DNA of 64,000 nucleotides from Octopus sinensis (lineage: Eukaryota), in assembly GCF_006345805.1 (NCBI RefSeq), contig NC_043002.1, positions 22,816,001-22,880,000 on the forward strand, given 5' to 3'. The notes beneath the pieces were generated by a model. That model had not been told where the DNA came from. It did not search any database and was given only the letters and a program-made list of their open reading frames with translations. Both the position numbers and the translations under genes were made by a program. Of this stretch, positions 2,909-59,650 are shown piece after piece (the stretch's first letter is position 1; each line of letters begins with the position of its first letter).

Positions 2909-3184
2909 GTATGATTAATTTATGGAATGAAATTCTACAAATCCAATCGTATTTGTCAAATATGGAGGAGATAAGATATTAAAAAAGTTGTAAGAAGTTT
3001 TGTTTTAAAGTGAAAGAGAGGAGAAAATGAAAGAGGTATATACGTGTGTTTGAAATGGACATGTGTGTGTGTGTGAAAGAGAGAGCGAGAGAGAAAAAGA
3101 GGAAGAGAGAGAGAAAAAAGGGAGAGAGTGAGTGAAGAGGTGTGTTGTCATGTATACGTACATACATCAATACATATCTCTTTC

Positions 3185-3648
3185 TCTTTTCTCTTTTACT
3201 TGTTTCAGTCATTTGACAGCGGCCATACTGGAGCACCGCCTTTTTAGTCGAGCAAATCGACCCCAGGACTTATTCTTTGTAAGCCTAGTACTTATTCTAT
3301 CGGTCTCTTTTGCCGAACCGCTAAGTAACGGGGACGTAAACACACCAGCATCGGTTGTCAAGCGATGTTGGGGAGACAAACACAGACACAGATACACACA
3401 CACACACACATATATATACATATATATATATATACGACGGGCTTCTTTCAGTTTCCGTCTACCAAATCCACTCACAAGGCTTTGGTCGGCCCGAGGCTAT
3501 AGAAGAAGACACTTGCCCAAGGTGCCACGCAGTGGGACTGAACCCGGAACTGTGTGGTTGGTAAGCAAGCTACTTACCACACAGCCACCCCTGCGCCTAT
3601 ATGCGTGCATCTTTTTGTATGTACGTGTGCATGTGTGTATGTGACAGA

Positions 3649-3679
<31 letters not shown>

Positions 3680-4216
3680 AAAGGGAGAGAGTGAGTGAAG
3701 AGGTGTGTTGTCATGTATACGTACATACATCAATACATATCTCTTTCTCTTTTCTCTTTTACTTGTTTCAGTCATTTGAGTGCGGCCATGCTGGAGCACC
3801 GCCTTTGTAGTCGAGCAAATCGACCCCCAGGACTTATTCTTTGTAAGCCTAGTACTTATTCTATCGGTCTCTTTTTGCCGAACCGCTAAGTAACGGGGAC
3901 GTAAACACACCAGCGTCGGTTATCAAGCGATGTTGGGGGACAAACACAGACACACAAACACACACACACACACATATATATATACATATATATACATATA
4001 TACGACGGGCTTCTTTCAGTTTCCGTCTACCAAATCCACTCACAAGGCTTTGGTCGGCCCGAGGCTATAGTAGAAGACACTTGCCCAAGGTGCCACGCAG
4101 TGGGACCGAACCCGGAACCGTGTGGTTGGTAAGCAAGCTACTTACCACACAGCCACCCCTGCGCCTATATGCGTGCATCTTTTTGTATGTACGTGTGCAT
4201 GTGTGTATGTGACAGA

Positions 4217-4247
<31 letters not shown>

Positions 4248-4735
4248 AAAGGGAGAGAGTGAGTGAAGAGGTGTGTTGTCATGTATACGTACATACATCA
4301 ATACATATCTCTTTCTCTTTTCTCTTTTACTTGTTTCAGTCATTTGACTGCGGCCATACTGGAGCACCGCCTTTTTAGTCGAGCAAATCGACCCCAGGAC
4401 TTATTCTTTGTAAGCCTAGTACTTATTCTATCGGTCTCTTTTGCCGAACCGCTAAGTAACGGGGACGTAAACACACCAGCATCGGTTGTCAAGCGATGTT
4501 GGGGAGACAAACACAGACACACAAACACACACACACACACATATATATACATATATATATATATACGACGGGCTTCTTTCAGTTTCCGTCTACCAAATCC
4601 ACTCACAAGGCTTTGGTCGGCCCGAGGCTATAGAAGAAGACACTTGCCCAAGGTGCCACGCAGTGGGACTGAACCCGGAACTGTGTGGTTGGTAAGCAAG
4701 CTACTTACCACACAGCCACCCCTGCGCCTATATGC
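3185..4735 (-). mobile_element. Three tandem copies of a tRNA-derived SINE plus ~140 bp of host repeat
   Basis: Near-identical ~565-bp units (cagtcattt motif near 3206, 3768, 4337); head on minus ggcgcaggggtggctgtgtggtaag...gggttcagtccc. Confidence 0.85.
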
Positions 4736-4774
4736 GTGCATCTTTTTTGTATGTACGTGTGCATGTGTGTATGT

Positions 4775-4813
<39 letters not shown>

Positions 4814-6054
4814 CGTGTCTGTTCCCATGTATGCGTAAGAGGCACTCTCTTTCTCTCTGACACACACATACATTTCATATACACATTCAAAAAGCTTTCC
4901 CTTTCTCCCCTCTATTTCACTTTAAAACATAAGTAACAGGTGATTTTTAGGATAAAAATTGTTTTAAAAAAAGGCTTCAATTCATGTAAATTGATTACTA
5001 TTGTTTGGATAGTTCTAATTAAATAAGTTAGGTTAAATATATAAGGCGCAGGAGTGGCTGTGTGGTAAGTAGCTTGTTTACCAACCACATGGTTCCGGGT
5101 TCAGTCCCACTGCATGGCACCTTGGGCAAGTGTCTTCTACTATAGCCTCGGGCCGACCAAAGCCTTGTGAGTGGTATGATATGTTTGGCTACGGCCTCAG
5201 GAGTAAAGTTGAAAAAGTATGACACACTGACACACTAACACACTGACATTCGCATTTATCATATTTGATTGTCCCTTCGCTTTAGTTGTATTACTATGTC
5301 ATTATGTTTCTGCTCTAATTCTGATTTTTCTCCCACACTATTATTGATCATTATTTATCGCTTTGTAGGACTGAAATATTTTCGTTATAATAACAAAGTA
5401 TCTATCCATAAAATTACTGTTCCAATTAATTTGAAATTCTCTCTTAATTTATCTATAAGAGTATAAATAAAAAAGTATTTTACAAATCAAATTCATCGCT
5501 CTGCGAGTTCCATATATCATCAGTTTCTATATCACCTCATATATATATATATATATCACGTGACCACGTGACTGACCAGACCATCAGATGTTGTTACACA
5601 TTGCTGGTCACAATGCGTTCCCATTGTTTTAGCCTTCGAATGACACCACCCCGCTGGCTAAGCGAGCAGACCAACAGAAGAAAGAGTGGGAGAAAGAGTG
5701 GTGAAAGAGTACAGTAAGGATCACCACCCCCTGCCGGAGCCTCGTGGAGCTTTTAGGTGTTTTCGCTCAATAAACACACACAACGCCCGGTCTGGAAATC
5801 GAAACCGCGAGTCCGCTGCCCTAACCACTAGGCCATTGCGCCTCCATATATATATATATTCAGTTTCCGTCTACCAAATCCACTCACAAGGCTTTGGTTG
5901 GCCCGAAACTATATTAGAAGACACTTGCCCAAGGTACCACGCAGTGAGACTGAACCATGTGGCTGGTAAGCAAGCTACTTACCACACAGTCACTCCTGCG
6001 CCTATATATATACAGAGAGAGAGAGAGAGAGTAAAAGAGAATCACCGACAGATT

Positions 6055-6565
<511 letters not shown>

Positions 6566-6776
6566 CATGCAATTTTCTTGCAATATTTGTTTGACACCTA
6601 GTGTATTTGTATGTGTCCGTGGAATTGTTACTTTATATATGTTTATATATGTATGCGTACGTGTGTGTCTATGTTTTGTTTGTGATTGTGTGTGTGTTCG
6701 TGTGTGTGTGCGTGAGTGTGTGTGTGTGTGTGTGTGTGTGTTCTTGTTCATGTCTGTGCTCATACGTGCAGCTTAC

Positions 6777-7026
6777 CTTTTCTGTACACGTGGCTTTCAA
6801 ATAGCGCCCCGGAACAAACGACTCCAGGGCTCTCTGGTCGATGTTGATGTCATTAAACTCGTCTAAATCCTGAATCTCTGATTTGTGCTCTTCTTCTGTT
6901 TCCATGACAACAGTGCATCCGCTGGGTATTGGTGTAGGCGATTTTGTGTGTTCTTCTTTATTAAGTCTTGTACTTCAGTGAAGGGTCAGTTAGTGTGGCC
7001 ACCATATTCTCGTTTTCAACTGAGAC
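6777..7026 (-). CDS. Left gene, coding exon (METEEE...CTEK); 5' part out of frame or UTR
   Basis: Acceptor ggtttgcag|GTC at 7026, donor AAG|gtaagc at 6777. 6905-6777 encodes METEEEHKSEIQDLDEFNDINIDQRALESFVPGRYLKATCTEK, phase 0 into the 1992 exon. The exon is 250 nt (3n+1). Confidence 0.7.
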
Positions 7027-16280: not shown

Positions 16281-16412
16281 CAATAAAAATTGCAAATTAA
16301 TTGCAATAACGAAGACAATAGAAGCAGCAACAACAACTGGATAGTAGGTTTTAAAGTGTTTTTATTGTAACAGCGTACAGTAGTGTTTTAGTGCCATCAC
16401 AAGCTGGGATTG

Positions 16413-17399
16413 TTAAAAATCTCTGTTATAAGAAAATGGAAAGGCATTTATATTCTGAATAATGTGTGGTGATCCATATGATTGCTGAGATGTTGCCGGA
16501 CTACGAATATCAGTAAAGTTTACTTGGTGGAATTTGATAAGTCGATTCTCGTATCTCTCATTTAACGTAGAAGAATCTACCACGGGAAACATAGCCCTCT
16601 GATCAGGACAGTAATCGCTAGTAGAGAAAGAAACTACACTGATGTCGTTCGAATCCAGAGGAGTACCTGGGTGAAATGATGTCAAATAATCTCTCCCGTA
16701 GAGACCTGGAGAAGGTAATTTTGCGAAGCTCTGTGAATTTGTTAAAGAATTGTTGATTCGCTGATTGCTGTGTATGTCGATAGAACTTGTTAAACCGCTT
16801 TCTAATTGTGGAAATATCCAACCACTGGTGCCCATGTTTCGTTGCTTTGAGCGGTCATCGTCCCTGAGTGTAAAGATTGCTGTTGGTGTAATTTGATTTG
16901 GTGGTGATCTGATATCGTAGTCGCTAATGAAAATGTTATTTTTGGAAGATTTATTAGATTGTAAAACCTTTCTTTTATTCTGATTGCGTGAGTTACACGA
17001 AAATTTCGGTAAATTTGTTTTGATATATTGATCTTCCCTTGTATCTCTCATTTTGAAAAGCTCTTTTCTCGTCTTATCGTCTGCTATTTCAAAATCGCCT
17101 GATTTTTTATTATCGTCTGTTATCATAGAGTTGTTTCCTCCCTTAGATTGTTTAAAGTGCGTCTTATGTCCGCCACATTCATCGTTGTTAAACCGCTCCA
17201 GTTCGTACATAATGCTTGTCAAAACTACAGTCGGAATGAGCCGAGTTTCTATTGATTTTGGTTGAGATGAAGAGGAAAGATGTGTTGAACCACTTTGAGA
17301 AGGTGTCGGCGATTCTTTACAGATTTTGTCAACTCTACGTTCGGCAGACATTTTCTGTTTCCCGACAACTTCTTTCCGGCGTCGATTCTGGAACCAAAC
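16413..17399 (-). CDS. PRD-class homeobox gene, last exon (helix 3 VWFQNRRRK plus Ser/Asn-rich tail)
   Basis: Acceptor cgatttttcag|GTT TGG TTC CAG AAT CGA CGC CGG AAA at 17399; 987 nt open to TAA at 16415-16413; includes track ORF 16413..17351; AATAAA (minus) at 16361-16366. Confidence 0.92.
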   Translation of the reverse strand, partial: VWFQNRRRKEVVGKQKMSAERRVDKICKESPTPSQSGSTHLSSSSQPKSIETRLIPTVVLTSIMYELERFNNDECGGHKTHFKQSKGGNNSMITDDNKKSGDFEIADDKTRKELFKMRDTREDQYIKTNLPKFSCNSRNQNKRKVLQSNKSSKNNIFISDYDIRSPPNQITPTAIFTLRDDDRSKQRNMGTSGWIFPQLESGLTSSIDIHSNQRINNSLTNSQSFAKLPSPGLYGRDYLTSFHPGTPLDSNDISVVSFSTSDYCPDQRAMFPVVDSSTLNERYENRLIKFHQVNFTDIRSPATSQQSYGSPHIIQNINAFPFSYNRDF

Positions 17400-18279
17400 C
17401 TGAAAAATCGCAAAAGAGAAAAACAGTTCTGTCGTTTAATACAAGGTCACCACTGGTACAGCAATTGTGTCATCAAATACATTCCAATGAACATCCGACT
17501 TTTTTTTTAATATCAGATAGCCAATATGTCCTTTTTTTTTAAACGGTTAGATGTGACTCGGCTACGATTTCTGGCATGTTATTTGTTCACTCAGTGGTTC
17601 CCTTGTTGGCTTATACAGTTCCATGCTATAGAGTTAACAAATGTAGATTTCAAATTTTGGCACAAAGCCAGCAACTTGGGGGGAAGGGTAAGTCGATTAT
17701 ACCGACCCCAATGTTCAACTAGTACCTATTTTATTGACCTTGAAAGGATGAAAGGCAAAGTCGACCTCGGAGGAATTTAAACTCAGAAAGTAAAGACGAA
17801 CGAAATGCTGCTAAGCATTTTACCCGGCATGCCAACGGTTCTGCCAGCTTGCAGCCTTAGATTTAACAAATATCGAAAAATAAAAGATAAACTCTTGGAG
17901 ATCCAATTTTGTTATTCCATTTCACTTTACCGTTATCTCATCGCGCCCGTGACAACAACCACAGCTATGATTCAACGAGGTGGCTGCTATGTCGTCACAT
18001 AACCCACTAGAAACAGCAGCCAAATCGCTTTCAGGCCATATGTGACTGTCTTAAGAAATGAATGACACACTACATAAGCTTGTCCTAAATTCATATCGTC
18101 TGAAAAAATGCGAGGTCAAATCTGAAATGCCTTTCGTCCTACACCTGTTCAGTCAGGTCTGACCTGGACTAGGGAAAAATAAAAATAACAAAATCTAAGC
18201 CAACAGTAACAAAGACGGAAGACGCCACAGCAACAACAACAACCAAGGCCATTGTCTTAACAATATTCTTTTCTACTCT

Positions 18280-19190
18280 AAGCACAAAGGCCCGAAATTT
18301 TGGGGGAGGAGGCCTGTCGATTAGACCGACAACAGTATGCAACTGGTACTTAATTTATCGACCCCGAAAGAATGAAAGGCAAAGTCGACCTTGGCGCAAT
18401 TTGAACTCAGAACGTAGCGGCAGACGAAATACCTATTTCTTTACTACCCACAAGGGGCCAAACACAGAGAGGACAAACAAGGACAGACAAACGGATTAAG
18501 TCGATTATATCGACCCCAGTGCGTAACTGGTACTTATTTAATCGACCCCGAAAGGATGAAAAGAAAAGTCGACCTCGGCGGAATTTGAACTCAGAACGTA
18601 GCGGCAAATGAAATACCTATTTCTTTACTACCTACAAGGGGCTAAACACAGAGAGGACAAACGAGGACAGACAAACAAGTTAAGTCGATTATATCGACCC
18701 TAGTGCGTAACTGACAGGCGTAACGGCAGACGAAATACCTATTTCTTTATTACCCACAAGGGGCTAAACACAGAGGGGACAAACAAGGACAGACATAGGT
18801 ATTAAGTCGATTACATCGACCCCAGTGCGTAACTGGTACTTAATTTATCGATCCCGAAAGGATGAAAGGCAAAGTCGACCTCGGCGGAATTTGAACTCAC
18901 AACGTAACGCAGACGAAATACCGCTAAGCATTTCGCCCGGCGTGCTAACGTTTCTTATTTCTTTACTACCCACAAGGGGCTAAACATAGAGGGGACAAAC
19001 AAGGACAGACAAAGGGATCAAGTCGATTACATCGACCCCAGTGCGTAACTGGTACTTATTTAATCGACCCCGAAAGAATGAAAGGTAAAGTCGACCTCGG
19101 CGGAATTTGAACTCCGAACGTGGCGGCAGACGAAATACCGCTAAGCATTTCGCTCGGTGTGCTAACGATTCTACTAGCTCACCGCCTTTG
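18280..19190 (-). mobile_element. Tandem cluster of family A SINEs in the homeobox intron
   Basis: About five units of ~130-190 bp, several joined at gaaatacc|tatttcttta. Confidence 0.85.
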
Positions 19191-19524
19191 TAGCTTCATC
19201 TTACTCAGTCTTGACCTGGGTCAAAACAACAACAACAACAACAACAGCAGCAGCTTACAAGGTCCATACATTCGGTTTCTATACAGACTTAACCGGGGCT
19301 AAACAATGACTTACATTCTTCATACAGCAAATCACATTTTCACAGCCAAGCGTGACCTATGGCTAAATAACAACAGCCTACAGACCTTATCTGGGGCTAA
19401 ACAACGATAATAACATCATGAATATCTGGACATCAGCCTGTTGCCTTTATAGATCTTCTCGCTCACACTTGACCTGGGGCTAAATGAAACTAATAACAAA
19501 CGCTCTAAGGTAAAACTGTCTCAC

Positions 19525-19750
19525 CTTCACCTGTTCTCGGTTGATGCCGACTCGTCTGGCAATGATCTGTTTCTGGATGCTGTTTGGGTAGCGAAGTCTC
19601 TCAAATATTCCGTTGAGTAACTGAAGCTGGTGACGGGTGTAGCTGAGTCTCTCCCTTGGTGACAGAACGAGGAAATCTAGTGGAGGAAGAAGGAAGAACG
19701 ACGATGTCAATGGTGAATGTGGTGATGATGGTGGTGGTGGTGTTTTGTTG
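19525..19750 (-). CDS. PRD-class homeobox gene, homeodomain exon (residues 1-46)
   Basis: SPRERLSYTRHQLQLLNGIFERLRYPNSIQKQIIARRVGINREQVK, then donor AAG|gtgaga at 19525 (phase 0, between HD codons 46/47). 5' boundary uncertain: candidate acceptors at 19755, 19750 or 19676. Confidence 0.88.
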
Positions 19751-19805
19751 CTGCGCTAAAAGAGCGTCGACGTCAACTTGTATCCCCTCTAGCTATTCTC
19801 TAGAG

Positions 19806-20158
19806 CAGTAGTTCTTAACTGCGGTCCATATAGTCCCTGAAGTTCCATATAAGACTTTTGGGGGTCCACGCAACTATATGGTAAAATGGGGATCCACAAT
19901 ATTATTTCAAGAGGCCCTTCAAAACAATGTTGCTTTAAATGTATGTATTAGTATGTATTGCAACAAAAAACAACTTGGTTTCTTTCTCTGATATTTTACA
20001 TAGTTCAACCTACACAAGTTGATGTGTGAAAAACAAAATAGGAATCTTGAAGGAAATATCTATAAATCTAGTTTTTAAACCTCGAACGGTTATGGGGTCC
20101 ACCAGAATAAAATAGTAATCAAAGGAGTACATGTATGAAAAATGTTTGAGAATCCCTG
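19806..20158. mobile_element. hAT (Charlie-like) MITE
   Basis: CAGTAGTTCTTAAC...GTTTGAGAATCCCTG TIRs; 8-bp TSD CTCTAGAG at 19798-19805 and 20159-20166. Confidence 0.9.
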
Positions 20159-20276
20159 CTCTAGAGGAAATCACTTGGTACTGACTATATTCTTGTTAAT
20201 GTTCTATCGCAGTTGATTGTGCCAGTTTTCTAAAAGGGAAACAAATCACTCGAAGTGAATTGCCGACCGATCTCAC

Positions 20277-20287
20277 TTGCCTCTCAT
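20277..20287 (-). CDS. Possible start exon of the homeobox gene (ATG AGA GGC AA)
   Basis: Donor AA|gtgaga, phase 2, compatible with acceptor gcgcag|C at 19750, giving MRGNNKTPPPPSS...; speculative. Confidence 0.25.
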
Positions 20288-20691
20288 ATCAACAAATTAT
20301 TTGAGAGATTAGTGAGATCCTGACTAACTCACTAACTTGGAAAGAAATAGTCTTCGTATTTCCAACCAACATGGTTTCTGTAATGGCAGGAACTGCTTAA
20401 CATATCTTCTGCATCACTTTGATGCCATTTTAAAGACTCTAAGGCGGCGAGCTGGCCGAAACGTTAGCACGCCGGGCGAAATGCTTAGCGGCATTTCGTC
20501 TGTCTTTACGTTCTGAGTTCAAATTCCGCCGAGGTCGACTTTGCCTTTCATAAATTAAGCACTGAGGTCGATCTTTGTAAGCCTAGTACTTATTCTATCG
20601 GTCTCTTTTGCCGAACCGCTCTGTTACGGGGACGCAAACACACCAGCATCGGTTGTCAAGCGATGTTGGGGGGACTAACACATACACACAA

Positions 20692-20722
<31 letters not shown>

Positions 20723-21962
20723 TATATACGACGGGCTTCTTTCAGTTTCCGTCTACCAAATCCACTCACAAGGCTTTGGTCGACCCGAGGCTATAGTAGA
20801 AGACACTTGCCCAAGATGCCACGCAGTGGGGCTGAACCCGAAACCATGTGGTTGGTAAGCAAACTACTTACCACACAGCCACTCCTGCTCGTGTACATTG
20901 CATTTACGGAGGTGTCTTTAACAATATTTAGTAGTTAAAGTTTATCATTATTAGCTCTGGTCAGTTCTAGAGGACATTCTGTCATAAATCGCAATTTTTG
21001 AACTAGATAAATATTGACTGTTTTGAAAACGTGTTGTTAATTTTTTTATTTCGTTTTTTTGCATTTCCCATCTATATCATTCATTGATTTTTCATACACA
21101 TTCGCATTTGACACAATAGTTTCAAAAAAGAAAAACTAAAATGTTGATTATTGCAATTGAAAAGAAAAGGATAAATATGCTTTTTTTCAGCGATCCCCAT
21201 TTAGGACTTTTCGAAAATGTTATAATAATTTCCAAAATAATTCACATATGAAGAAAATTTAAATACTATAAATTATTTTATAGCCAAGCCAAAAAACATG
21301 AATACAAAATTTAGCAGTTAATGGGTTAAATTTTTCCTGAAATCATGCTAATATTTTCCATAATACTGCTAAAATTACAATAATCAGATCTGTTGTAATA
21401 ACTATTGTACTTATGGGAATATCCAATATTTTTAAATCTTTCTGGTGCAGCTGAAAGTAACAACTTTCTTGACATATGACGTATGCAAAATTTAGACTCT
21501 CTACATGCAAAGCTGTAGGCTACAACGTGGATCGTATTTGAAATTTTCCAATATAAAGATATAATTAGCGTTTAGATTCATCTTTCGAATGTCGAAGAAA
21601 AATACAAGTTTGCAAATATTGGGATCGATTGACCCGATAAGGGCTTTGAAGTAGGGGCTGCGTAATTATGAAACTCTCCAATGACTGAAAACATTGCGAT
21701 GTGTTGTGTATATTACATGCGTATTTATGTGTGCGCGTGTATGTGTATGTATGTATGTGTGTGTATGTGTGTGTGTATGTGTGTGTTTACATATACATAT
21801 ATACACATACATATATATAACACACACACACACACATCTATGTATACACACACACACACACACATATATATATGTATATACATATGTATTGAAATATAAA
21901 TATACGTGTGTTTTATATATATATATGTATGTATATATACATATATGTGTTATATATATAAG

Positions 21963-21999
<37 letters not shown>

Positions 22000-22785
22000 T
22001 GTGTGTGTGTGTTATATATATATATATACACACACACACAAACATTTTCAGATATACATTTATACATATACAAGTACACATATATATGCGTATGTGTGTA
22101 AATATGTGTGTGTTATATATATATATATATATATATATATGAGCGACAGACATATATATATATATATGTTTGCATATATATCTGTATGTATGAACACGCA
22201 CACACACATGAGCGTATGCACAAACAAGCATACACACAAAGGTATGCGTAGAAAATAATGAAAACCCCCACACTCAGTAAAACACACAAAAGAGCAATGA
22301 TGCATAGGGAACTTGTGGATTTTCATACCTGCTTGGTCTTTTTCCATTGTCGTTCCCATCTAGCCTCTTCTTCTTCTTCTTTTTCTTCTTTTTCTTCTTT
22401 TTCTTCTTCTTCTACTTCTACTTCTTCTTTTCTCCTTCTTCCTCTTCTTCTCACTGCCCAGCCACAGACGTCAATCTCCTACCTGGCCAAATGCAACAAT
22501 AGTTGATAATAGACTAAGCTCCTGGCAACATCTTCTGGTCGCTAGCCAACTTCCGCTCGGCCAAAACACCTAACGGCGTTTGTCGCTGACCCGAGATTAC
22601 GACCGGAAGATTTGGAATGCAATGGTGAAAAGAGAAGGGGGGAGAATTAAAGTGAGGAGGTGGGGGTAAGGTTGGGTGAAGGGACCAGGGGTTAGGGAAA
22701 AGGAAGGAAAACAAAAGTTTACAGATTTACTTACCTATCTTCTGTTAAAAAGAATGTTTATGTGCATGTATGTGTATATATATAT

Positions 22786-23934: not shown

Positions 23935-24410
23935 TTTCTTTATTGCCCACAAGGGGCTAAACATATAGGGGACAAACAAGGACAGGCAAACGGATTAAGT
24001 CGATTACATCGACCCCTTTGTGTAACTGGTACTTATTTAATCGACCCAGAAAGGATGAAAGGCAAAGTCGACCTCGGCGGAATTTGGACTCAGAATGTAG
24101 CGGCAGACGAAATACCTATTTCTTTACTACCCTCAAGGGGCTAAACACAGAGGGGACAAACAAGGACAGACAAACTGATTAAGTCGATTATATAGACCCC
24201 AGTGCGTAACTGGTACTTTCTTTACTACCTTCAATGGGCTAAACACAAAGGGGACAAACAAGGACAGACAGACGGATTAAGTCGATTATATCGATCCCAG
24301 TACGTAACTGGTACTTAATTTATCGACCCCGAAAGGATGAAAGGCAAAGTCGAAATACCGCAAAGCATTTCGCCCGGCGCGCTAACGTTTCTGCCAGCTC
24401 GCCGCCTTAA
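23935..24410 (-). mobile_element. Family A SINE tandem cluster
   Basis: Three partial units of the family A sequence. Confidence 0.8.
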
Positions 24411-28691: not shown

Positions 28692-30653
28692 TATTATTAT
28701 ATATATATATATATATATATATGCATATAAAAACATGCAGGAAGTAAATAGGCACCTTTAATTTTCAAAATCTTTTATTTAATACGCAAAGCGAACAATT
28801 GAAATGTAATCGATAGGTAGGACTACATACTTTAGTTTCAAGTTGACATTCCCTTTGCAGTTTTTAATTCAGAAACTATTTTTTTGCGTTGAACTGATGA
28901 GTCTTGTGATTGTCTCTTGCGGAATTTCTGCCCACTTTTCACGCAACAATTGAAACAATTCAACTTTAGATTTAGGTTTCTGTTGAGTTTTTCACATAGC
29001 TCTATCTAGTATTCACCAAAGATTTCACTGCTCAACAAAATGAAACTTTTTTTAACCATCAGAGTTGCTGATTGATTTTTTCTGGGTTACGCTTTGATGC
29101 TGATTACGAATCTGAAGTCTGATTTCCTCTATCAGGTCACATTTTCATGTTAATGATACCTGCTGTTTTAACTTAAATGATGCGTAAAACGTGTCTATAT
29201 AAAGTATATAGAGGTGTTGATCTGCAACAATTTAAAGAAATAATAGTGGCGTAAAGGCGGCGTGCTGGTAGAATCGTTTGCACGCCGGGCGAAATGCTTA
29301 GCGGTATTTCGTCTACCGCTACGTTCTGAGTTCAAATTCCGCCGAGGTCGCCTTTGCATTTCATCCTTTTGGGGTCGATAAATTAAGTACCAGTTACGCA
29401 CTGTGGTCGATGTAATCGACTTAATCCCTTTGTCTCTCTTTGTTTGTCCCCTCTATGTTTAGCCCCTTGTGGGCAATAAAGAAATAAGAATCGATAACAA
29501 CCCGGGTAAAATGCTTAGCGGCGCATCGTCCGCCTTTGGCTCTGAGTTCAAATTCTGCCGAGGACGATTTTTGCTTTCATCCTTTCGGGGTCAATAAAAT
29601 AAGTATCGACTGAGTACAGGGGTCAATGTAATGATTTACCTCCTCCAACAAAACTGCCAAAATCAGAAACCAATATTAATGGCATCAATTTCAACCCATC
29701 TCAGAGAACATGCAAAGGTCATGGACGAAGACCCTAGCTCGAAATTCTACAAGTAAAAGATAAAGCAAAATAATTTGCCTATATAGGCGTAGAAGTAGCT
29801 ATGTGGTAAGTAGCTTGGTTCCGGGTTCAGTCCCACTGCGTAGCACCTTGGGCAAGTGTTTTTTTACTATAGCCTCGGGCTGACCAAAGCCTTGTGAGTG
29901 GATTTGGTAGACGGAAACTGAAAGCAGCCCGTCATATATATGTGTATATATGTGTGTACATATGTTTGTGTGTCTGTGTGTTTACGTCCCCGTAACTTAG
30001 CGGTTCGGCAAAAGAAACAGATAGAATAAATACTAGGCATACAAAGAATAAGTTCTGGGGTCGATTTGCTCGACTAAAGGCGGTGCTCCAGCATGGCCAC
30101 AGTCGCATGACTGAAACAAGTAAAAGAGAGTAAAGAGTAAAATGTACAAAGCTAAGAAGCTGTAGGGATATTTTGATGAAAATTTGATGTTTTCTTACAC
30201 GGTCCGTATCTTACTCAAACATAGACAGTCCAGCCAATCTTAATTCCATCAACGCCATCTGACCTCTACGCACGCACATATACACATATGTACAAACATA
30301 TACATTACATGCGTATATATACACGCCCGTCACACTTATACAAGCACGCGCAACACACACGCACATTCACACAAACACACACACACGCACATGTACACAT
30401 TCGTGGTCAGACAGATGGACGCCAGACCTTCCAAAGTCTTAAGTTTTCACACAAAACATTTCAGTTACTTACTGATAGCAAATAACAACATGGGGCGCGT
30501 GAATACGGGTGGTGTGCTTGTGGAAATGGCATGGCGGTGGTGGTGGTGGTGGTGAGGTGGTGGTGGTGGTTGTGGTTGTGTCGGTGGTAGTGGTAGTGGA
30601 TGTGGTGGTGAAGAGGCTGGTGATGGGTGTAATATGACAGTGGTACGGTAGCT

Positions 30654-35982: not shown

Positions 35983-37272
35983 CGAGGGGCGTTCAATAAG
36001 TAATACCCATGACCCACTTCCCATAGCAGTAGAGCAACGAAACTTGGAACAGTTATTAGTCTTTTTCTACATAAGAACCACCCAGAGTTACGCATTTCTC
36101 CCATCGTTTGATGCAGCTCTGAAGACCGTTTTTGTAGAAGACCCCAGCTTGGTCCTCCAACCACGACGTGACTTCAGAAATCAAGGCTGCATCATCTGAG
36201 AAACGCTTTCCTTTCAAACACAACTTCATGGCTGGAAGAGGTGAAAATCAGAGGGTGCAAGGTCAGGAGAGTAGGGGGATGGGGGATGAGTTCATAGCCG
36301 CACGCCTGTGTTTCTGATCTGGCGACACGCGAGTTGTGGATCGGAGCGTTGTCCTGCAGGAGGAGGGTGCCTTTGCTGATCTTGCCCCGCCTCTTGATTT
36401 TGATAGCTTCTCTTAATTTCCTCAAAAGTGAAGCATAATAGACTCCTGTAATTGTGGCACCCTTTGCCAGGAAATCTGTCATCACTACTCCGTCCTGGTC
36501 CCAGAAGACTGTAAGCATGGCCTTGCCAGCGGAGGGCTGCACCCTTGCCTTCTCTGGAGAAGGTGAGTCACGGTGCTTCCACTGCATTGACTGGGCTTTG
36601 GTCTCTGGATCATAGTGATAGACTCAGGTTTTATCCTATGCAATCAGTCTTTTGAAAAATTTTGACTCTTCTTCTTGGCACATCTCCAAATTCATCCTCG
36701 AGCACTCGACGCGTTCTTGCTTCTGGAAAGGTGTGAGCAACCTGGGAATCCATCTGGCAGACACCTTTTGCATATGCAAATAGTCATGAATGATAGTTTC
36801 CACAGACCCGGTACTAATCTTGACCTCATGTGCTATTTGGCGAATAGTTATGCGTCGATCTTCCAAAATGGCAGCCTCAACTTGACAGACAGTTGCCTCA
36901 TCAATGGCAGAAGTGGGCGACCAGATCTGGGAGCTGTTTCCACAGAGTTCCGACCATGTTTGAATTCACGATGCCAGCGTTTTACAAGGTCATATGATGG
37001 GGCATTATCACCATAAGTTTCTTTCATTTCATCAAAAGTCTCCCGTGGTGTGCGTCCTTTCAAATACAAAAACCGGATCACTGCTCGACACTCAACATGC
37101 TCCATTTCACACTTGACTCAGTTCAAACACCTGTAAATCGGAAACCACAATTAGTTCAGAGCTGTAATTCTCCACTTAATCTATAGAGATATAAATAATT
37201 GCACATGCAAAATTTCAGCTAGATCAAACAACTGCAAGTGGGTCAGAGGCATTACTTATTGAACGCCCCTCG
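35983..37272 (-). mobile_element. Near-complete mariner transposon with frameshifted transposase
   Basis: TIR CGAGGGGCGTTCAATAAGTAAT, TA TSD; transposase pieces 36848..37105, 36636..36866 (WIPRLL) and 36192..36587 (LLQDNAPIH). Confidence 0.95.
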
Positions 37273-43021: not shown

Positions 43022-44272
43022 CAAGGGACGTTCAATAAGTAATGCCCCTGACCCACTTGCCTTTGTTTAATGTAGCTGAAATTTTGCATGTGCAATTATA
43101 TATATCTCTATAGATTAAGTTGCAAATTATAGCTCTGAACTAATTGTGGTTTCTGATTTATAGGTGTTTGAACTGAGTCACGTGTGAAATGGAGCCTGTT
43201 GAGTGTCGAGTAGTGATCCGGTTTTTGTATTTGAAAGGACGCACGCCACGGGAGACTTTTGATGAAATGAAAGTAACTTATGGTGATGATGCCCCATCAT
43301 ATGACCTTGTAAAACGCTGGCATCGTGAATTCAAACATGGTCGGAACTCTGTGGAAACAGCTCTCAAATCTGGTCGCCCCCCTTCTGCCATTGATGAAGC
43401 AATTGTCCGTCAAGTTGAGGCTGCCATTTTGGAAAAATGGGCTATTCGCCAAATAGCCCATGAGGTCAAGATTAGTACCGGGTCTGTGGAAACTATCATT
43501 CATGACCATTTGCATATGCAAAAGGTGTCTGCCAGATGGATTTCCAGGTTGATAACACCTTTCCAGAAGCAAGAACGCGTCGAGTGCTCGAGGATGAATT
43601 TGGAGATGTGCCAAGAAAATGAGTCAAAATTTTCAAAAGACTGATTAAACAGGATGAAACCTGGGTCCATCACTATCATCCAGAGAACAAAACCCAGTCA
43701 ATGCAATGGAAGCACCGTGACTCACCTCCTCCAGAGAAGGCAAGGGTGCAGCTCTCCGCTAGTAAGGTCATGCTCACAGCCTTCTGGGATCAGGACGGAG
43801 TAGTGATGACAGATTTCCTGGCAAAGGGTACCACAATTACAGGAGCCTATTATGCTTCACTTTTGAGGAAATTAAGAGAAGCTATCAAAATCAAGAGGCG
43901 GTGCAAGATCAGCAAAGGCACCCTCCTCCTGCAGGACAACGCTCCAGTCCACAACTCGCGTGTCGTCACATCAGAAGCACAGGCGTGCGGCTATGAACTC
44001 CTCTGATTTTCACCTCTTCCCAGCCATGAAGTTGCTTTTGAAAGGAAAGCGTTTCCCAGATGATGCAGCCTTGATTTCTGAAGTCACGTCGTGGTTGGAG
44101 GACCAAGCTGGGGTCTTCTACAAAAACGGTCTCCAGAGCTACATCAAACGATGGGAGAAATGCGTAACTCTGGGTGGTTCTTATGTAGAAAAAGACTAAT
44201 AACTGTGCCAAGTTTCGTTGCTCTACTGCTATGGGAAGTGGGTCAGGGGCATTACTTATTGAACGCCCCTCG
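43022..44272 (+). mobile_element. Near-complete mariner transposon (same family as 35983-37272)
   Basis: Same TIRs, TA-flanked; ORFs 43189..43644, 43701..44006 and 43960..44199 give a frameshifted transposase with an internal deletion. Confidence 0.95.
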
Positions 44273-48582: not shown

Positions 48583-50511
48583 TGTTATAATGTGGATCCT
48601 CGTCCATTTGTATGTTGCCGTTGGCACTGTAATATTCTTGTCGCCACTATTATGTTGTGGCGGTATTCCGCGTCTTATTATTTTTGACACGTCTATCGTG
48701 CTATCGTTGATAGTTCCGCCAGCCAATGACCTTGAAACATCTACCTTGACTCGTTCAAAATGCAATTAGACACTACCCGTGTTTAATTGCATTTTGATAC
48801 TAGTAGCTTCGATTCTCACCTTGATGAATTTTCTTTTCATTGTATTTACTTTTTTCTCTGATGACAAACTATTTTTTCTCGTTTGGTCCAATTTTTCGTC
48901 ATTGCGATTTCATGTGTCCTGTGTTCCAACATAAAAAAAACACTTCGCTTTTTTGAAAGGACTGTCTTTCCTCAGGTGCCTACCACCACATGACATACAT
49001 GGCTTTATCTCCTAGTATATATCCGTCTTCCGACACTTCCACACTGATTTTATCTGTAAACAGTCTCTGCGTTAGATTTCTTCTGTATCATGCCTTACCT
49101 TTAATATCATATCGCACTCTTCTGACAGTTTCTGGAGAGCTATATCCTGGTTCATTTCCAGCTTTGCGAGAATTTTCGTTCTGACTTCTGCGTTTTTTTC
49201 AACAGTAATTCCCTGAGCAAAAACCAGGCACTTGAACAAGTCTGGAGTTAGCTTATCTAGTTTAAATCTTTCGCACTCTCTGTTATATGGTAAAGTATTC
49301 GTCATCGCTTTTCTCAGTGTTCAAACACTTCAAATGTGTGTTGACCAACGATGCTTTTTCACTAAATATCCTGCTTAGAATGTTAATTGTGACTGTGAAA
49401 TTTATGTCAGAAACTTTTTTAGGCAATATAAAGTTACAGTATTTCTCATGCGTGGAGGTGCAATGGCCCAGTGGTTAGGACAGCGGACTCGCGGTCGGAG
49501 GATCGCGGTTTCGATTCCCAGATAGGGTGTTGTGTATGTTTATTAAGCGAAAACACCTAAAGCTCCACGAGACTCCGGCAGTGGGTGGTGGCGACCCCTG
49601 TTGTACTCCTTCGCCCCAACTTCTCACTCTTTCTTCTTATTTCTTGAGTAACGCTGCGATGGACTGGCGTCCCGTCCAGCTGGGAAAAACACATACGCCA
49701 CAGAAACCAGAAAACCGGGCCCATGAGCCTGGCTAAGCTTGAAAAAGGCGAAAAAAATTTTTTATGAAGCCCTATCGTCGCCAGTTTCCTCAGAATTAGA
49801 CGCATTTTCATTTCGTCCGTCCAATTTTGGCATTCCTTTTCGAAAATTTGTTCAAATCTTTGGTAATATGCCACGAAAGTGATTCTTTCATCCGGGTCGT
49901 ATTTAAATTCATTTATTGAATTTGCTACATGGTCTAGCGAAAACGTATTTTTCGCTTTTATTATCAACTTCATTAGTTGTAGCATTTGTTTTGGTCTTCT
50001 TGTTGTGTGAGTTGTTGTTATGCTGTTTTTGCAATTCAACTAAACCTTCTAATAAGTTTTCCATAATTTTACGGATTTTTCGTAGAATATATATATATAT
50101 ATATATATAACAAAAATGTTTGTTACTCCCCCGTCGAGTTTTTAATTTCTCGACGTGTGAAAACTTTGCGACGTCGTCTGCGTGAATTGTTTATATCCAA
50201 GTCGCCACTATTATAATGTAGATCCTCGTCTACTTGTATGTTGTCCTCGGCACTGTAAGATTCTTGTCACCACTATTATGTTGTAGAGGTATTCCGAATC
50301 TTATTATCTTTGACTCGTCTATCGTGTTATCGCTGATAGTTCCGCAAGACAACGACTTTGTAACATCTACTTTGACGGTAACTCGAACTCGAATATATCA
50401 CGTAATTAACTCTGACTTCAACTGAGAACTCGTACAACGACTTTACTACTACTGAACTCCTACAACGACTGACTGTTACGTGGGAAAGTGTGTACCATTT
50501 TCACTACAACA
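48583..50511 (-). mobile_element. Internally deleted LTR retrotransposon (gag only)
   Basis: TG...CA ends, 5-bp TSD AAAAC (48578-48582, 50512-50516); LTR similarity 48585-48750 vs 50211-50376; PBS-like TGGCGAC near 50207; gag pieces 49557..50039 and 49072..49305; CCHC remnant ~48900-48975. Confidence 0.9.
49453..49745 (+). mobile_element. tRNA-derived SINE with V-domain-like core, nested in the LTR element
   Basis: tRNA-like head, then gctgcgatggactggcgtcccgtccag; interrupts the gag frame. Confidence 0.75.
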
Positions 50512-57850: not shown

Positions 57851-58746
57851 TGTTTGCATGTGTGTATGCATGTATGTTTGTATGTATGTATATATGTATA
57901 ATATATATAATGTATATATTGGGTTGGTGCATAGTTATTGCGGCTTTTTTTCAACAAATTTTATTCAACAAAAACAATAACAATATTTAACAAAAACATT
58001 TTTAAATCACGGTCTGACCGTCTGCCAAGCAAATGGGAAACAGTAATTGAAGTGGATGGTGGATATGCTCCGGAATAATCATTGACAGATGTTTTTGTTA
58101 CATGTTATTGTTTTTGTTGAATAAAATTTGTTGAAAAAAAGCCGCTATATATTTCTTTACTACTCACAAGGAGCTAAACACAGAGGGGAAAAACAAGGAC
58201 AGACAAACGGATTAAGTCGATTACATCGACCCCAGTGCGTAACTGGTACTTAATTTATCGACCCCGAAAGGATGAAAGGCAAAGTCGACCTCGGCGAAAT
58301 TTGAACTCGGAACGTAACGACAGATGAAATACGGCTACGCATTTCGCCCGGCGCGCTAACGTTTCTGCCAGCTCGCCGCCTATTGTATATATGTAAGTGT
58401 GTGTTTATGCATGAATGCGAGTGTGAATGTATACGTGTATGTGTAATACACATAAAGTTTTATATTTCTAAGTATCTACAATATGTAAAACATTTGACAG
58501 TTTGTTTTAGTTTTGAAGAAAATAGTAAATGCTCTATATTTTCTTGCATTCAAGTGATACGCAGCAACATAAAACAACCCGCTTTAAAGAAATGCGCTTT
58601 ATTCAACAATAGGTGCAGGAGTGGATGCGTGGTAAGATGCAATCACACGGTTCCAGGTTCAGTCTCAATGCACGGCACCTTGAGGAAGTATCTTCTACTA
58701 CAGCCTCGAGCTGACCAAAGCCTTGTGAATGGATTTGGTAGACGTG

Positions 58747-58814
<68 letters not shown>

Positions 58815-58839
58815 TGTGTCTGTGTGTGTGTGTGTGTGT

Positions 58840-58893
<54 letters not shown>

Positions 58894-58919
58894 TTGTCCT
58901 CAGCCATCGCTTGACAACC

Positions 58920-59650
58920 AAAAAGTCGGCCTCGGCGAAATTTGAACTCAGAACATAAAGAAAGACGAAATACCTATTTCTTTATTACCCACAAGGGGCT
59001 GAACACAGAGGGGACAAACATGGACAGACATAGGTATTAAGTCGATTATATCGACCCCAGTGCTTAACTGGTACTTAATTTATCGACCCCGAAAGGATGA
59101 AAGGCAAAGTCGACCTCGGCGGAATTTGAACTCACAACGTAACGGCAGACGAAATACCGCTAAGCATTTCGCCCGACGTGCTAACGATTCTGCTAGCTCG
59201 CCGAAATACCGCTAAGCATTTCGTCTGGCGTGCTAACTATTCTTTTCTACTCTAGGCACAAGGCCCTAAATTTGGGGGTGAGGGGAGCAGTCGATTATAT
59301 CGACCCCAGTACGCAACTAGTACTTATCGACCCCGAAATGATGAAAGGCAAAGTCGACCTCAGCGGAATTTGAACTCAGAACCTATAAAGAAAGACGAAA
59401 TACCGTTAAGCATTTCGCCCGGCGTGCTAACGATTCTTTTCTACTCTAGGCACAAGGCCCGAAATTTGGTGGGGTGTGCAGTCGATTATATCGACCCCAG
59501 TATGCAACTAGTACTTAATTTATCGACCCGGAAAGGATGAAAGGCAAAATTGACCTCAGCGGAATTTGAACTCAGAACGTAAAGAAAGACAAAATACCGC
59601 TAAGCATTTCGTCCGGCGTGCTAACGATTCTCCCAGGTCACCGCCTTGCT
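58920..59650 (-). mobile_element. Family A SINE tandem cluster
   Basis: Several overlapping partial units. Confidence 0.8.

What the first reader, a model, noticed from the sequence alone, without database searches (positions are those of the whole stretch)
16413..19755. Divergent PRD-class Q50 homeobox gene hidden across a SINE-filled intron
Seen: splicing 19525 to 17399 gives a full homeodomain, SPRERLSYTRHQLQLLNGIFERLRYPNSIQKQIIARRVGINREQVK|VWFQNRRRKEVVGK, plus a ~315-aa Ser/Asn-rich tail. Known: an intron between HD codons 46/47 is typical of the PRD class. The N-terminal arm is Otx-like (RER..TR.QL), but residue 50 is Q rather than K. Helices 1-2 are strongly divergent, and position 54 is R rather than the usual A. 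I see no OAR or Otx WSP motif in the tail. Inference: it fits no conserved bilaterian PRD family I recognise and may be a fast-evolving lophotrochozoan- or cephalopod-specific homeobox gene.
Basis: partly seen in the sequence, partly recalled or inferred. Interest (0 to 1): 0.78.

Follow-up and report, generated by a model that had tools for sequence, protein, structure and literature searches.

The report
Octopus copy of Lopx homeobox gene
This is the octopus copy of Lopx, a homeobox transcription-factor family already described in molluscs, annelids and brachiopods; octopus genomes already annotate the gene under a misleading name, so the find is real but ordinary.

Summary
On the minus strand, joining 19525 (GTG AAG|gtgaga) to 17399 (tttttcag|GTT TGG) gives exactly the quoted 60-residue homeodomain (Pfam PF00046, E=4.3e-15). 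A 314-residue tail follows. The gene has three exons, not two. A 31-nt first exon with the ATG lies at 22359..22329, and exon 2 starts at 19676, not 19755.

[quoted passage not shown] It is 94% identical, without gaps, to O. bimaculoides XP_014782262.1. Barton-Owen et al. 2018 (PMC6118893) list that accession as the octopus member of Lopx ("lophotrochozoan-only homeobox").

In a tree of 116-127 PRD-class homeodomains the window's domain falls inside Lopx (bootstrap 97-99%). It is 62-82% identical to the other mollusc and annelid Lopx domains (48% to the aberrant Lingula one), against at most 42% to any other family. Single-copy relatives occur in bivalves, gastropods, an annelid, nemerteans and rotifers.

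So the gene is neither hidden nor cephalopod-specific. Minor additions: the 46/47 intron is conserved in Lopx of molluscs, an annelid and a nemertean; rotifers have Lopx; octopods keep a shortened, faster-evolving version.

The parts
22329..22359 (-). Coding exon 1: ATG plus 10 1/3 codons (MGTTMEKDQA, then the first base of D11). Donor gtatga at 22328..22323. A (GAA)n microsatellite abuts the ATG upstream.
   Evidence: Found by six-frame search for the N-terminus of P0001. The same short exon and the same phase-1 junction occur in Argonauta hians (ATGGACAAACACGAAGCAG|gtgaga). The resulting 389-aa product matches XP_029637961.2 exactly.
19677..22328 (-). Intron 1 (2,652 nt, phase 1), rich in microsatellites.
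19525..19676 (-). Coding exon 2 (152 nt): five linker residues plus homeodomain residues 1-46. The homeodomain part is 19662..19525.
   Evidence: Acceptor cttccttcttcctccactag|ATTTCC and donor AAG|gtgaga. tblastn of P0001 onto the O. vulgaris locus gives the same exon.
17400..19524 (-). Intron 2 (2,125 nt, phase 0) between homeodomain codons 46 and 47. It holds six SINE-like repeat copies: 17690-17858, and a tandem block at 18316-19190.
   Evidence: The same intron position occurs in Argonauta, Mizuhopecten, Elysia and O. vulgaris and in Owenia and Tubulanus.
16413..17399 (-). Coding exon 3 (987 nt including the TAA at 16415..16413): homeodomain residues 47-60 (17399..17358) plus the 314-residue tail.
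   Evidence: The whole exon stays open in a further Octopus-like genomic contig, L006.
17190..17237 (-). Conserved motif 1, IPTVVLTSIMYELERF (protein residues 116-131). The family pattern is VVP.VVMKS.I.EL..F.
   Evidence: L128 is invariant across 19 proteins from four phyla; E127 and L128 are invariant among the 13 mollusc proteins. AlphaFold2 predicts a helix at 118-129 with block pLDDT 73-93, while the rest of the tail is below 50.
16872..16919 (-). Conserved motif 2, YDIRSPPNQITPTAIF (protein residues 222-237).
   Evidence: D223, P227, P228 and N229 are invariant in the 13 mollusc proteins of alignment A1. PPN-type motifs also appear in the annelid and nemertean proteins.
16361..16366 (-). 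AATAAA, a candidate polyadenylation signal starting 47 nt after the stop codon.
   Evidence: Sequence only. No transcript evidence was available.

Best explanation
The locus is the Octopus (sinensis-type) orthologue of Lopx, a single-copy homeobox family restricted to spiralians. It is a three-exon gene on the minus strand (CDS 22359..16413) encoding a 389-aa protein. The protein has a short N-terminus, a 60-residue Q50 homeodomain (residues 16-75) split by a phase-0 intron at positions 46/47, and a short conserved helix about 40 residues downstream. The rest is a long, mostly disordered Ser/Asn-rich tail that carries a conserved SPPNQITPTA-type linear motif. Shown here: gene structure, family membership, orthology, intron conservation and purifying selection. 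Inferred: it acts as a sequence-specific transcription factor. The homeodomain would bind TAAT-core sites, since the DNA-contacting residues R5, Q50, N51 and R53 and the W48/F49 core are all present. The two conserved tail motifs would recruit partner proteins. Compared with other molluscs, octopods keep a stripped-down version. It lacks the long acidic N-terminal region, has at best faint remnants of the C-terminal motifs, and has a faster-changing homeodomain.
For: (1) Identity. The translated three-exon model matches XP_029637961.2 [O. sinensis] exactly. It sits in one 90% cluster with CAI9724814.1 [O. vulgaris] and XP_014782262.1 [O. bimaculoides], and it is 94% identical to the latter without gaps. 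PMC6118893, supplementary sheet 'LOPX', lists XP_014782262.1 as O. bimaculoides Lopx. It also lists XP_021359506.1/OWF47443.1 as scallop Lopx; my hit P0014 carries the same two names, OTX1-like and ESX1. (2) Phylogeny. In an NJ tree of 116 PRD-class homeodomains from that paper's supplementary file 9 plus mine, the window groups inside Lopx with 97.4% bootstrap. With nemertean, rotifer and Owenia domains added the value is 98.8%. The Otx and Hopx control clades score 99%, Lopx+Otx 0% and Lopx+Hopx 8%. Identity is 37-49 of 60 to the other mollusc and annelid Lopx domains (29 to the aberrant Lingula one), against at most 25 of 60 (Prrx) to anything else. (3) Signature. All 11 residues that are at least 85% conserved in Lopx and at most 10% frequent in other PRD families are present: S7, Y8, I19, N27, Q30, K31, I40, R42, Q44, K46, R54. 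(4) Conservation outside the homeodomain. Motifs 1 and 2 are shared, and motif 1 is predicted helical at high confidence. (5) Gene structure. The 46/47 intron with GT/AG occurs in Argonauta, Mizuhopecten, Elysia, O. vulgaris, Owenia and Tubulanus. Exon 1 and its phase-1 junction are conserved in Argonauta. (6) Selection. dN/dS is 0.08 for the homeodomain and 0.32 for the tail against Argonauta, and 0.44 for the tail against a second Octopus-like species. The CDS differs from O. vulgaris at 3 of 1,170 nt, while flanking DNA is 94.6-98.8% identical. (7) An SRA-derived contig from a cephalopod-like relative (L001) carries the homeodomain uninterrupted, as a spliced mRNA would.
Against: No RNA reads from Octopus itself could be examined, so the 19525/17399 junction rests on the RefSeq and ENA gene models, canonical splice sites and conservation. 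The tree is a simple NJ tree on 60 columns, limited to PRD-class sequences plus one ANTP outgroup. CUT-class domains, for which Lopx has been mistaken in general trees, were not included. dS against Argonauta is saturated (about 1.3-1.5), so those ratios are rough. Function is entirely inferred. In the literature I could search, Lopx in the homeobox sense appears in only two papers; neither passage read reports a functional test, and no DNA-binding study turned up. I could not see which motif Figure 6b of PMC6118893 calls the Lopx-specific one.
Confidence: 0.93

Rival explanations
1. It is a new, cephalopod-specific, fast-evolving PRD-class homeobox gene with no orthologues elsewhere.
For: The octopus homeodomain is more diverged than other mollusc Lopx domains: 46 of 60 identical to oyster. 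The protein lacks the N-terminal acidic/RPFTPPPP region and clear copies of the C-terminal motifs found in bivalves and gastropods. Database names (Mix.2-like) give no hint of a family.
Against: Full-length colinear relatives with the same homeodomain signature and tail motifs exist across Mollusca, Annelida, Nemertea and Rotifera. The clade has 97-99% bootstrap support. The O. bimaculoides orthologue is already published as Lopx.
Confidence: 0.02
2. It is a divergent orthologue of a classical PRD family such as Otx/ceh-37, Mix or Nobox, as the automatic names in the databases suggest.
For: The N-terminal arm RER..TR.QL resembles Otx. Family members are named OTX1-like, OTX5-like, ocelliless-like, ceh-37, ceh-36-like, Mix.2-like, NOBOX-like and unc-4 homolog. 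OTX2 and ceh-37 are among the better solved-structure matches.
Against: Residue 50 is Q, not the K of Otx. Identity to Otx domains is below 25 of 60. The Lopx+Otx grouping has 0% bootstrap while Otx alone has 99%. No TF_Otx or OAR Pfam hit was found. Molluscs and annelids have separate bona fide Otx genes in the same data set. The inconsistent names across species are typical of best-hit naming, and PMC6118893 reports exactly this mis-annotation. Mix and Nobox domains were not in my tree.
Confidence: 0.02
3. It is a decaying or non-functional copy: an open reading frame kept by chance or a young pseudogene, with the long repeat-filled intron as a sign of neglect.
For: The tail evolves fast: 43% identity to Argonauta with dN/dS 0.32, and 79% identity to another Octopus-like species with dN/dS 0.44. 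No octopus transcript was examined. The intron is 44% interspersed repeat.
Against: The 389-codon frame, both splice junctions and the start codon are intact in O. sinensis, O. vulgaris and O. bimaculoides, and a colinear 361-codon frame with the same junctions is intact in Argonauta. Homeodomain dN/dS is 0.08. All DNA-contact and core residues are retained. It is the only Lopx copy found in these genomes. Repeat-rich introns are the norm in this window.
Confidence: 0.03

Closest known systems
Lopx (LOPhotrochozoan-only homeobox) family, Barton-Owen et al. 2018, GBE 10:2151 (PMC6118893). Members include O. bimaculoides XP_014782262.1 and C. gigas CGI_10016179 (Cgi_Hbx_2 of Paps et al. 2015).
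   Same: Same homeodomain signature (11 of 11 diagnostic residues) and the same clade. It is 94% identical and colinear with the published octopus member. It shares the post-homeodomain helix motif and the SPPNQ motif with mollusc members, and the 46/47 intron with members from three phyla.
   Different: Nothing sets it apart from the O. bimaculoides gene. Compared with bivalve and gastropod Lopx, octopod proteins are shorter (389 aa against 400-700). They have only 15 residues before the homeodomain and lack clear PVLSDLL, NRVFPFPFIADPP and SSLSNPYY motifs. They also have 11-16 substitutions in the homeodomain.
Otx / orthodenticle / ceh-37 (PRD class, K50)
   Same: N-terminal arm RER..TR.QL, the YP motif at positions 25-26, and a 46/47 intron. 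Annotation pipelines often confuse the two families.
   Different: Q50 instead of K50, R54 instead of A54, and N27 instead of D27. Helices 1-2 are unrelated and there is no Otx tail domain. The clades are separate (0% joint bootstrap).
Q50 paired-like homeodomains (Prrx, Otp, Arx, DUX4 and others)
   Same: Q50, the overall fold and the 46/47 intron. They are the closest non-Lopx domains by identity (Prrx, 25 of 60) and by solved structure (DUX4, PRRX2).
   Different: At most 42% identity. It lacks the near-universal PRD-class D27 and A54 and has no OAR domain.
Hopx (divergent PRD-class family)
   Same: In PMC6118893, Lopx grouped apart from all PRD families except Hopx. Both share an 'IIA..VGI' stretch in helix 2-3.
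   Different: Lopx keeps the DNA-contact residues (R5, Q50, N51, R53), whereas the Hopx domains in the data set have L53 and H/N51 variants. Joint bootstrap is only 8%.

Membership tests
Lopx | The homeodomain falls in the strongly supported Lopx clade, apart from the canonical PRD families. | tested here: met
   NJ bootstrap is 97.4% (116 domains) and 98.8% (127 domains). Identity is 37-49 of 60 to the other mollusc and annelid Lopx domains, against at most 25 of 60 to non-Lopx domains.
Lopx | Family-specific homeodomain residues (derived here from the published alignment): S7, Y8, I19, N27, Q30, K31, I40, R42, Q44, K46, R54. | tested here: met
   11 of 11 are present in the window's domain.
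Lopx | [quoted passage not shown] 6b of PMC6118893). | tested here: inconclusive
   The figure's sequences are not in the held text. Two motifs outside the homeodomain are conserved between octopus and other family members. I cannot say which of them, if either, is the published one.
Lopx | Orthology to a member named in the defining paper. | tested here: met
   It is in the same 90% cluster as XP_014782262.1 and 94% identical to it over all 389 residues without gaps. That accession is listed as O. bimaculoides Lopx.
Lopx | Taxonomic restriction to lophotrochozoans. | tested here: inconclusive
   Named hits at E<=1e-15 are all spiralian: molluscs, an annelid, nemerteans and rotifers. No ecdysozoan or deuterostome names appear. 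Rotifers lie outside Lophotrochozoa in the strict sense, so the range looks wider than the family name suggests.
PRD class of homeobox genes | Intron between homeodomain codons 46 and 47. This is typical of the class according to established knowledge; it was not re-derived here. | tested here: met
   Present in the window and in Lopx of Argonauta, Mizuhopecten, Elysia, O. vulgaris, Owenia and Tubulanus. Absent in the intronless Brachionus gene.
PRD class of homeobox genes | The homeodomain groups with PRD-class families in a tree of all classes. | not tested
   Only PRD-class domains and one ANTP outgroup were used. PMC6118893 leaves Lopx unclassified. The nearest solved structures are PRD-class proteins: DUX4, PRRX2 and OTX2.
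Otx | K50 and a C-terminal Otx tail domain. | tested here: not met
   Residue 50 is Q. No TF_Otx hit was found. Lopx+Otx has 0% bootstrap.
Mix/Bix (the name carried in RefSeq) | The homeodomain groups with vertebrate Mix-type domains. | not tested
   No Mix domains were in the data set. The name appears to be a best-hit label, and the same family is named after at least eight other genes in other species.

The most novel reading that the evidence does not exclude
Lopx may be a genuine PRD-class family that arose before the split of Gnathifera and Lophotrochozoa. That would make it pan-spiralian rather than 'lophotrochozoan-only' and 'unclassified'. Two results point this way. The class-typical 46/47 intron is conserved in molluscs, an annelid and a nemertean. 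Rotifers (Brachionus, Seison) carry clear Lopx homeodomains. Within this old family, octopods have kept a shortened version with an accelerated homeodomain, which could mean a change of partners or targets in that lineage.
Probability: 0.5. Interest if true: 0.3.

Novelty: already known. Interest (0 to 1): 0.15.

Why it matters
For the scan, this is a true positive that is already explained. A reader without tools correctly spliced a homeodomain across a 2.1-kb repeat-filled intron and correctly sensed that it fits no classical family. However, the gene is in RefSeq and its orthologue was classified in 2018. The practical value is modest. It shows that the RefSeq name 'Mix.2-like' is misleading and that the gene should be called Lopx. 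It adds gene-structure evidence (the 46/47 intron) on the open question of which class Lopx belongs to. It also suggests that the family is older (rotifers) than its name implies. No function is known for any Lopx gene, so expression and binding-site studies would be new, but nothing here makes the octopus copy a special case.

Tried and rejected
ARAGORN and an Rfam E-value scan of the homeodomain intron found no tRNA or other RNA family, so the tRNA origin of the repeat is not shown. Searching the supplement of PMC6118893 for the octopus tail motifs found nothing, so the published Lopx-specific motif could not be matched. Searching papers for the run accessions SRR8281664 and SRR11869390 found nothing, so the source species of L001 and L006 stay unidentified. 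The representatives search gave family size only (127 clusters at E<=1e-10), with no names. Looking up seven clusters named only the three Octopus proteins. I considered Hopx affinity, Otx affinity and a pseudogene reading and rejected them (see rivals). No fold search was run, because the homeodomain fold is not in doubt.
Full report
OBSERVATION. On the minus strand the sequence reads ...CGA GAA CAG GTG AAG|gtgaga at 19525/19524 and ...tctcttttgcgatttttcag|GTT TGG TTC CAG AAT CGA CGC CGG AAA at 17400/17399. Joining the two gives, in frame, SPRERLSYTRHQLQLLNGIFERLRYPNSIQKQIIARRVGINREQVK|VWFQNRRRKEVVGK. This is a complete 60-residue homeodomain with the intron between codons 46 and 47. The spliced product hits Pfam Homeodomain at E=4.3e-15 (55.7 bits against a cut-off of 22.9). 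Its best solved relatives are DUX4, PRRX2 and OTX2. After the homeodomain the frame stays open for 314 residues (Ser 14%, Asn 8%) and ends at TAA 16415..16413. No OAR or Otx-tail family is hit. The 2,125-nt intron holds six copies or part-copies of a ~216-nt interspersed repeat: 17690-17858, and a tandem block at 18316-19190. They cover 942 nt, or 44%. The repeat has 26 hits in the window on both strands. ARAGORN and Rfam do not call a tRNA in it, so 'SINE' is a reasonable label but is not demonstrated here.

GENE MODEL. A polypyrimidine tract and AG (cttccttcttcctccactag|ATTTCC) place the start of exon 2 at 19676. A 31-nt first coding exon, ATG GGA ACG ACA ATG GAA AAA GAC CAA GCA G|gtatga, lies at 22359..22329. 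Exons of 31 + 152 + 987 nt give 389 codons plus a stop. Argonauta hians has the same short first exon (ATGGACAAACACGAAGCAG|gtgaga) and the same phase-1 acceptor (tatcag|ATATCC). Its frame upstream of that acceptor contains stops, so 19677-19755 is intronic. An AATAAA lies 47 nt after the stop, at 16366..16361.

IDENTITY. [quoted passage not shown] It shares a 90% cluster with CAI9724814.1 [O. vulgaris] and XP_014782262.1 [O. bimaculoides]. It is 94% identical to the latter over all 389 residues with no gaps. The window's DNA is 94.6-98.8% identical to the O. vulgaris locus, while the CDS differs at only 3 of 1,170 nt. The window is therefore from O. sinensis or something very close to it. The gene is not hidden: it is annotated in three Octopus genomes.

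FAMILY. The first proper protein search returned full-length relatives in Argonauta (46% identity, 99% coverage) and in many bivalves and gastropods. These carry a jumble of automatic names: OTX1-like, OTX5-like, ocelliless-like, ESX1, ROC4-like. before it was my own mistyped query and means nothing. Barton-Owen et al. 2018 (PMC6118893) described exactly such 'putative ceh-37' genes as a new family, Lopx (LOPhotrochozoan-only homeobox). They found it to be a strongly supported clade apart from all PRD families except Hopx, with its own C-terminal motif, and left it unclassified as to class. Their supplementary sheet 'LOPX' lists XP_014782262.1 as O. bimaculoides Lopx. It also lists XP_021359506.1/OWF47443.1 as scallop Lopx; my hit P0014 carries the same two names, OTX1-like and ESX1. 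The oyster member is CGI_10016179, the unplaced 'Cgi_Hbx_2' of Paps et al. 2015.

TESTS OF MEMBERSHIP. I took PRD-class homeodomains from their supplementary file 9, added the window's domain and five of my hits (116 domains in all), and built NJ trees. The window falls inside Lopx with 97.4% bootstrap. The control clades Otx and Hopx score 99%, Lopx+Otx 0% and Lopx+Hopx 8%. Identity is 37-49 of 60 to the other mollusc and annelid Lopx domains and 29 to the aberrant Lingula one. The best non-Lopx match (Prrx) reaches 25 of 60. With Owenia, two nemerteans, three rotifers and others added, the clade holds at 98.8%. Eleven positions are at least 85% conserved in Lopx and at most 10% shared by other PRD families: S7, Y8, I19, N27, Q30, K31, I40, R42, Q44, K46 and R54. 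The window has all eleven. The 'divergent helices 1-2' and the 'unusual R54' are therefore the family signature and not octopus oddities.

Outside the homeodomain, two motifs are shared. The first is IPTVVLTSIMYELERF (residues 116-131). L128 is invariant across 19 proteins of four phyla, and E127 with it among the 13 mollusc proteins. The second is YDIRSPPNQITPTAIF (residues 222-237), where D223, P227, P228 and N229 are invariant among 13 mollusc proteins. AlphaFold2 with the family alignment gives a confident three-helix homeodomain (block pLDDT 88-95). It also gives a confident extra helix at 118-129 (block pLDDT up to 93). Everything else is below 50 and likely disordered.

GENE STRUCTURE AND SELECTION ACROSS SPECIES. 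The 46/47 intron, with QVK|gt...ag|(V/I)WFQNRRR, is present in Lopx of Argonauta (525 nt), Mizuhopecten, Elysia and O. vulgaris. It is also present in the annelid Owenia and the nemertean Tubulanus. The Brachionus gene has no intron. Several truncated gene predictions in the databases read straight through 'QVK' into this intron. A 1,652-nt contig assembled from run SRR8281664 (L001) encodes a cephalopod-like Lopx with the homeodomain uninterrupted. That is what a spliced mRNA would look like, but its species is unknown. Against Argonauta, dN/dS is 0.08 for the homeodomain and 0.32 for the tail; dS is saturated, so these are rough. Against a second Octopus-like genomic contig (L006), whose exon 3 is open from the acceptor to the stop, the tail gives 0.44. 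The gene is therefore under purifying selection, strong on the homeodomain and relaxed on the tail. Only one copy was found in O. vulgaris and in Argonauta.

HOW IT MOST LIKELY WORKS. Shown: the gene is intact, conserved and spliced like its relatives, and it encodes a homeodomain protein. Inferred from general homeodomain knowledge: it is a nuclear, sequence-specific transcription factor. With R5, Q50, N51, R53 and the W48/F49 core in place, it should bind TAAT-core sites in the manner of Q50 paired-like domains. The conserved helix and the SPPNQ motif in an otherwise disordered tail look like docking sites for partners. Within the searchable literature, Lopx in the homeobox sense appears in only two papers; neither passage read reports a functional test, and no DNA-binding study turned up. 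The only expression note is its presence in Spirobranchus operculum-regeneration transcriptomes.

WHAT IS DIFFERENT IN OCTOPODS. Bivalve and gastropod Lopx proteins are 400-700 aa long. They have a long N-terminal region ending in an acidic run and RPFTPPPP, and C-terminal motifs PVLSDLL, NRVFPFPFIADPP and SSLSNPYY. Octopus and Argonauta have 15 or fewer residues before the homeodomain and at most faint remnants of those C-terminal motifs. Their homeodomains carry 11-16 changes relative to other molluscs.

COMPARISON AND NOVELTY. The locus is a member of Lopx by every test I could run. It is not Otx: it has Q50, no Otx tail and 0% joint bootstrap. 'Mix.2-like' is a best-hit label. The finding is already known. 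Two small points go beyond the 2018 description, which did not sample rotifers or nemerteans and did not mention Lopx introns. First, the class-typical 46/47 intron is conserved across three phyla, which argues for PRD-class ancestry. Second, Brachionus and Seison have clear Lopx domains, so the family appears spiralian-wide. Both need a proper all-class phylogeny and named genomes before they can be claimed.

VERDICT. Interest is low.

Noticed in passing
P0057, P0068 (Brachionus), P0062 (Seison), P0054 (Tubulanus), P0058 (Lineus), P0048 (Owenia); loci L007-L009: Clear Lopx homeodomains occur in rotifers and nemerteans, which the paper defining the family did not sample. They join the Lopx clade at 98.8% bootstrap. 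The 46/47 intron is present in Owenia and Tubulanus but absent from the intronless Brachionus gene. The 'lophotrochozoan-only' range may therefore be too narrow.
   Followed up: partly
window 18316-19190 (also 23952-24408, 29253-29632, 58169-59647): The ~216-nt SINE-like repeat often sits in head-to-tail arrays of full and partial copies (TRF periods 122, 184 and 216), not as single insertions. The array in the homeodomain intron is shared with O. vulgaris, whose intron is 2,148 nt against 2,125 here. The Argonauta intron is only 525 nt.
   Followed up: partly
window 43189-43644 (+) and 36192-36587 (-): These are fragments of mariner/Mos1-type transposase: HTH_48 at E=2.8e-9, and the Transposase_1 partial DDE domain at E=1.9e-21. 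Neither is a full-length frame.
   Followed up: partly
window 49557-50039 (-): A 160-aa ORF hits Pfam DUF7083 (E=1e-11). It is possibly part of a mobile element; I did not pursue it.
   Followed up: no
window 3190-3592, 3753-4160, 4321-4723: Three tandem copies of a ~400-nt unit, about 92% identical to a single copy upstream of Lopx in the O. vulgaris locus (L005 5934-6329). Near-identical ORFs at 3132-3644 and 4263-4838 overlap two of the copies.
   Followed up: no
window 22366-22451: A (GAA)n/(TCT)n microsatellite of about 29 units lies just upstream of the Lopx start codon, ending six bases before the ATG at 22359, so the 5' UTR or promoter-proximal region is simple sequence. Intron 1 is also dense in TG/TA microsatellites (21721-22167).
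   Followed up: no
L005 25477-25969, corresponding by the colinear alignment to roughly window 6400-6900 (-): In O. vulgaris the next called gene downstream of Lopx has a weak RhoGAP hit (471-aa product running off the locus). In Argonauta a 437-aa gene also starts about 2 kb downstream of Lopx. I did not test whether the two are orthologous.
   Followed up: no
L001 (Logan SRR8281664 contig, 1,652 nt): A transcript-like contig encodes a 236-aa Lopx with cephalopod-type residues (IIARRVG, KVWFQNRRRKEV) but a much shorter tail. Four more cluster members come from other Logan contigs. The species is unknown; it could be a decapodiform or another cephalopod lineage.
   Followed up: partly
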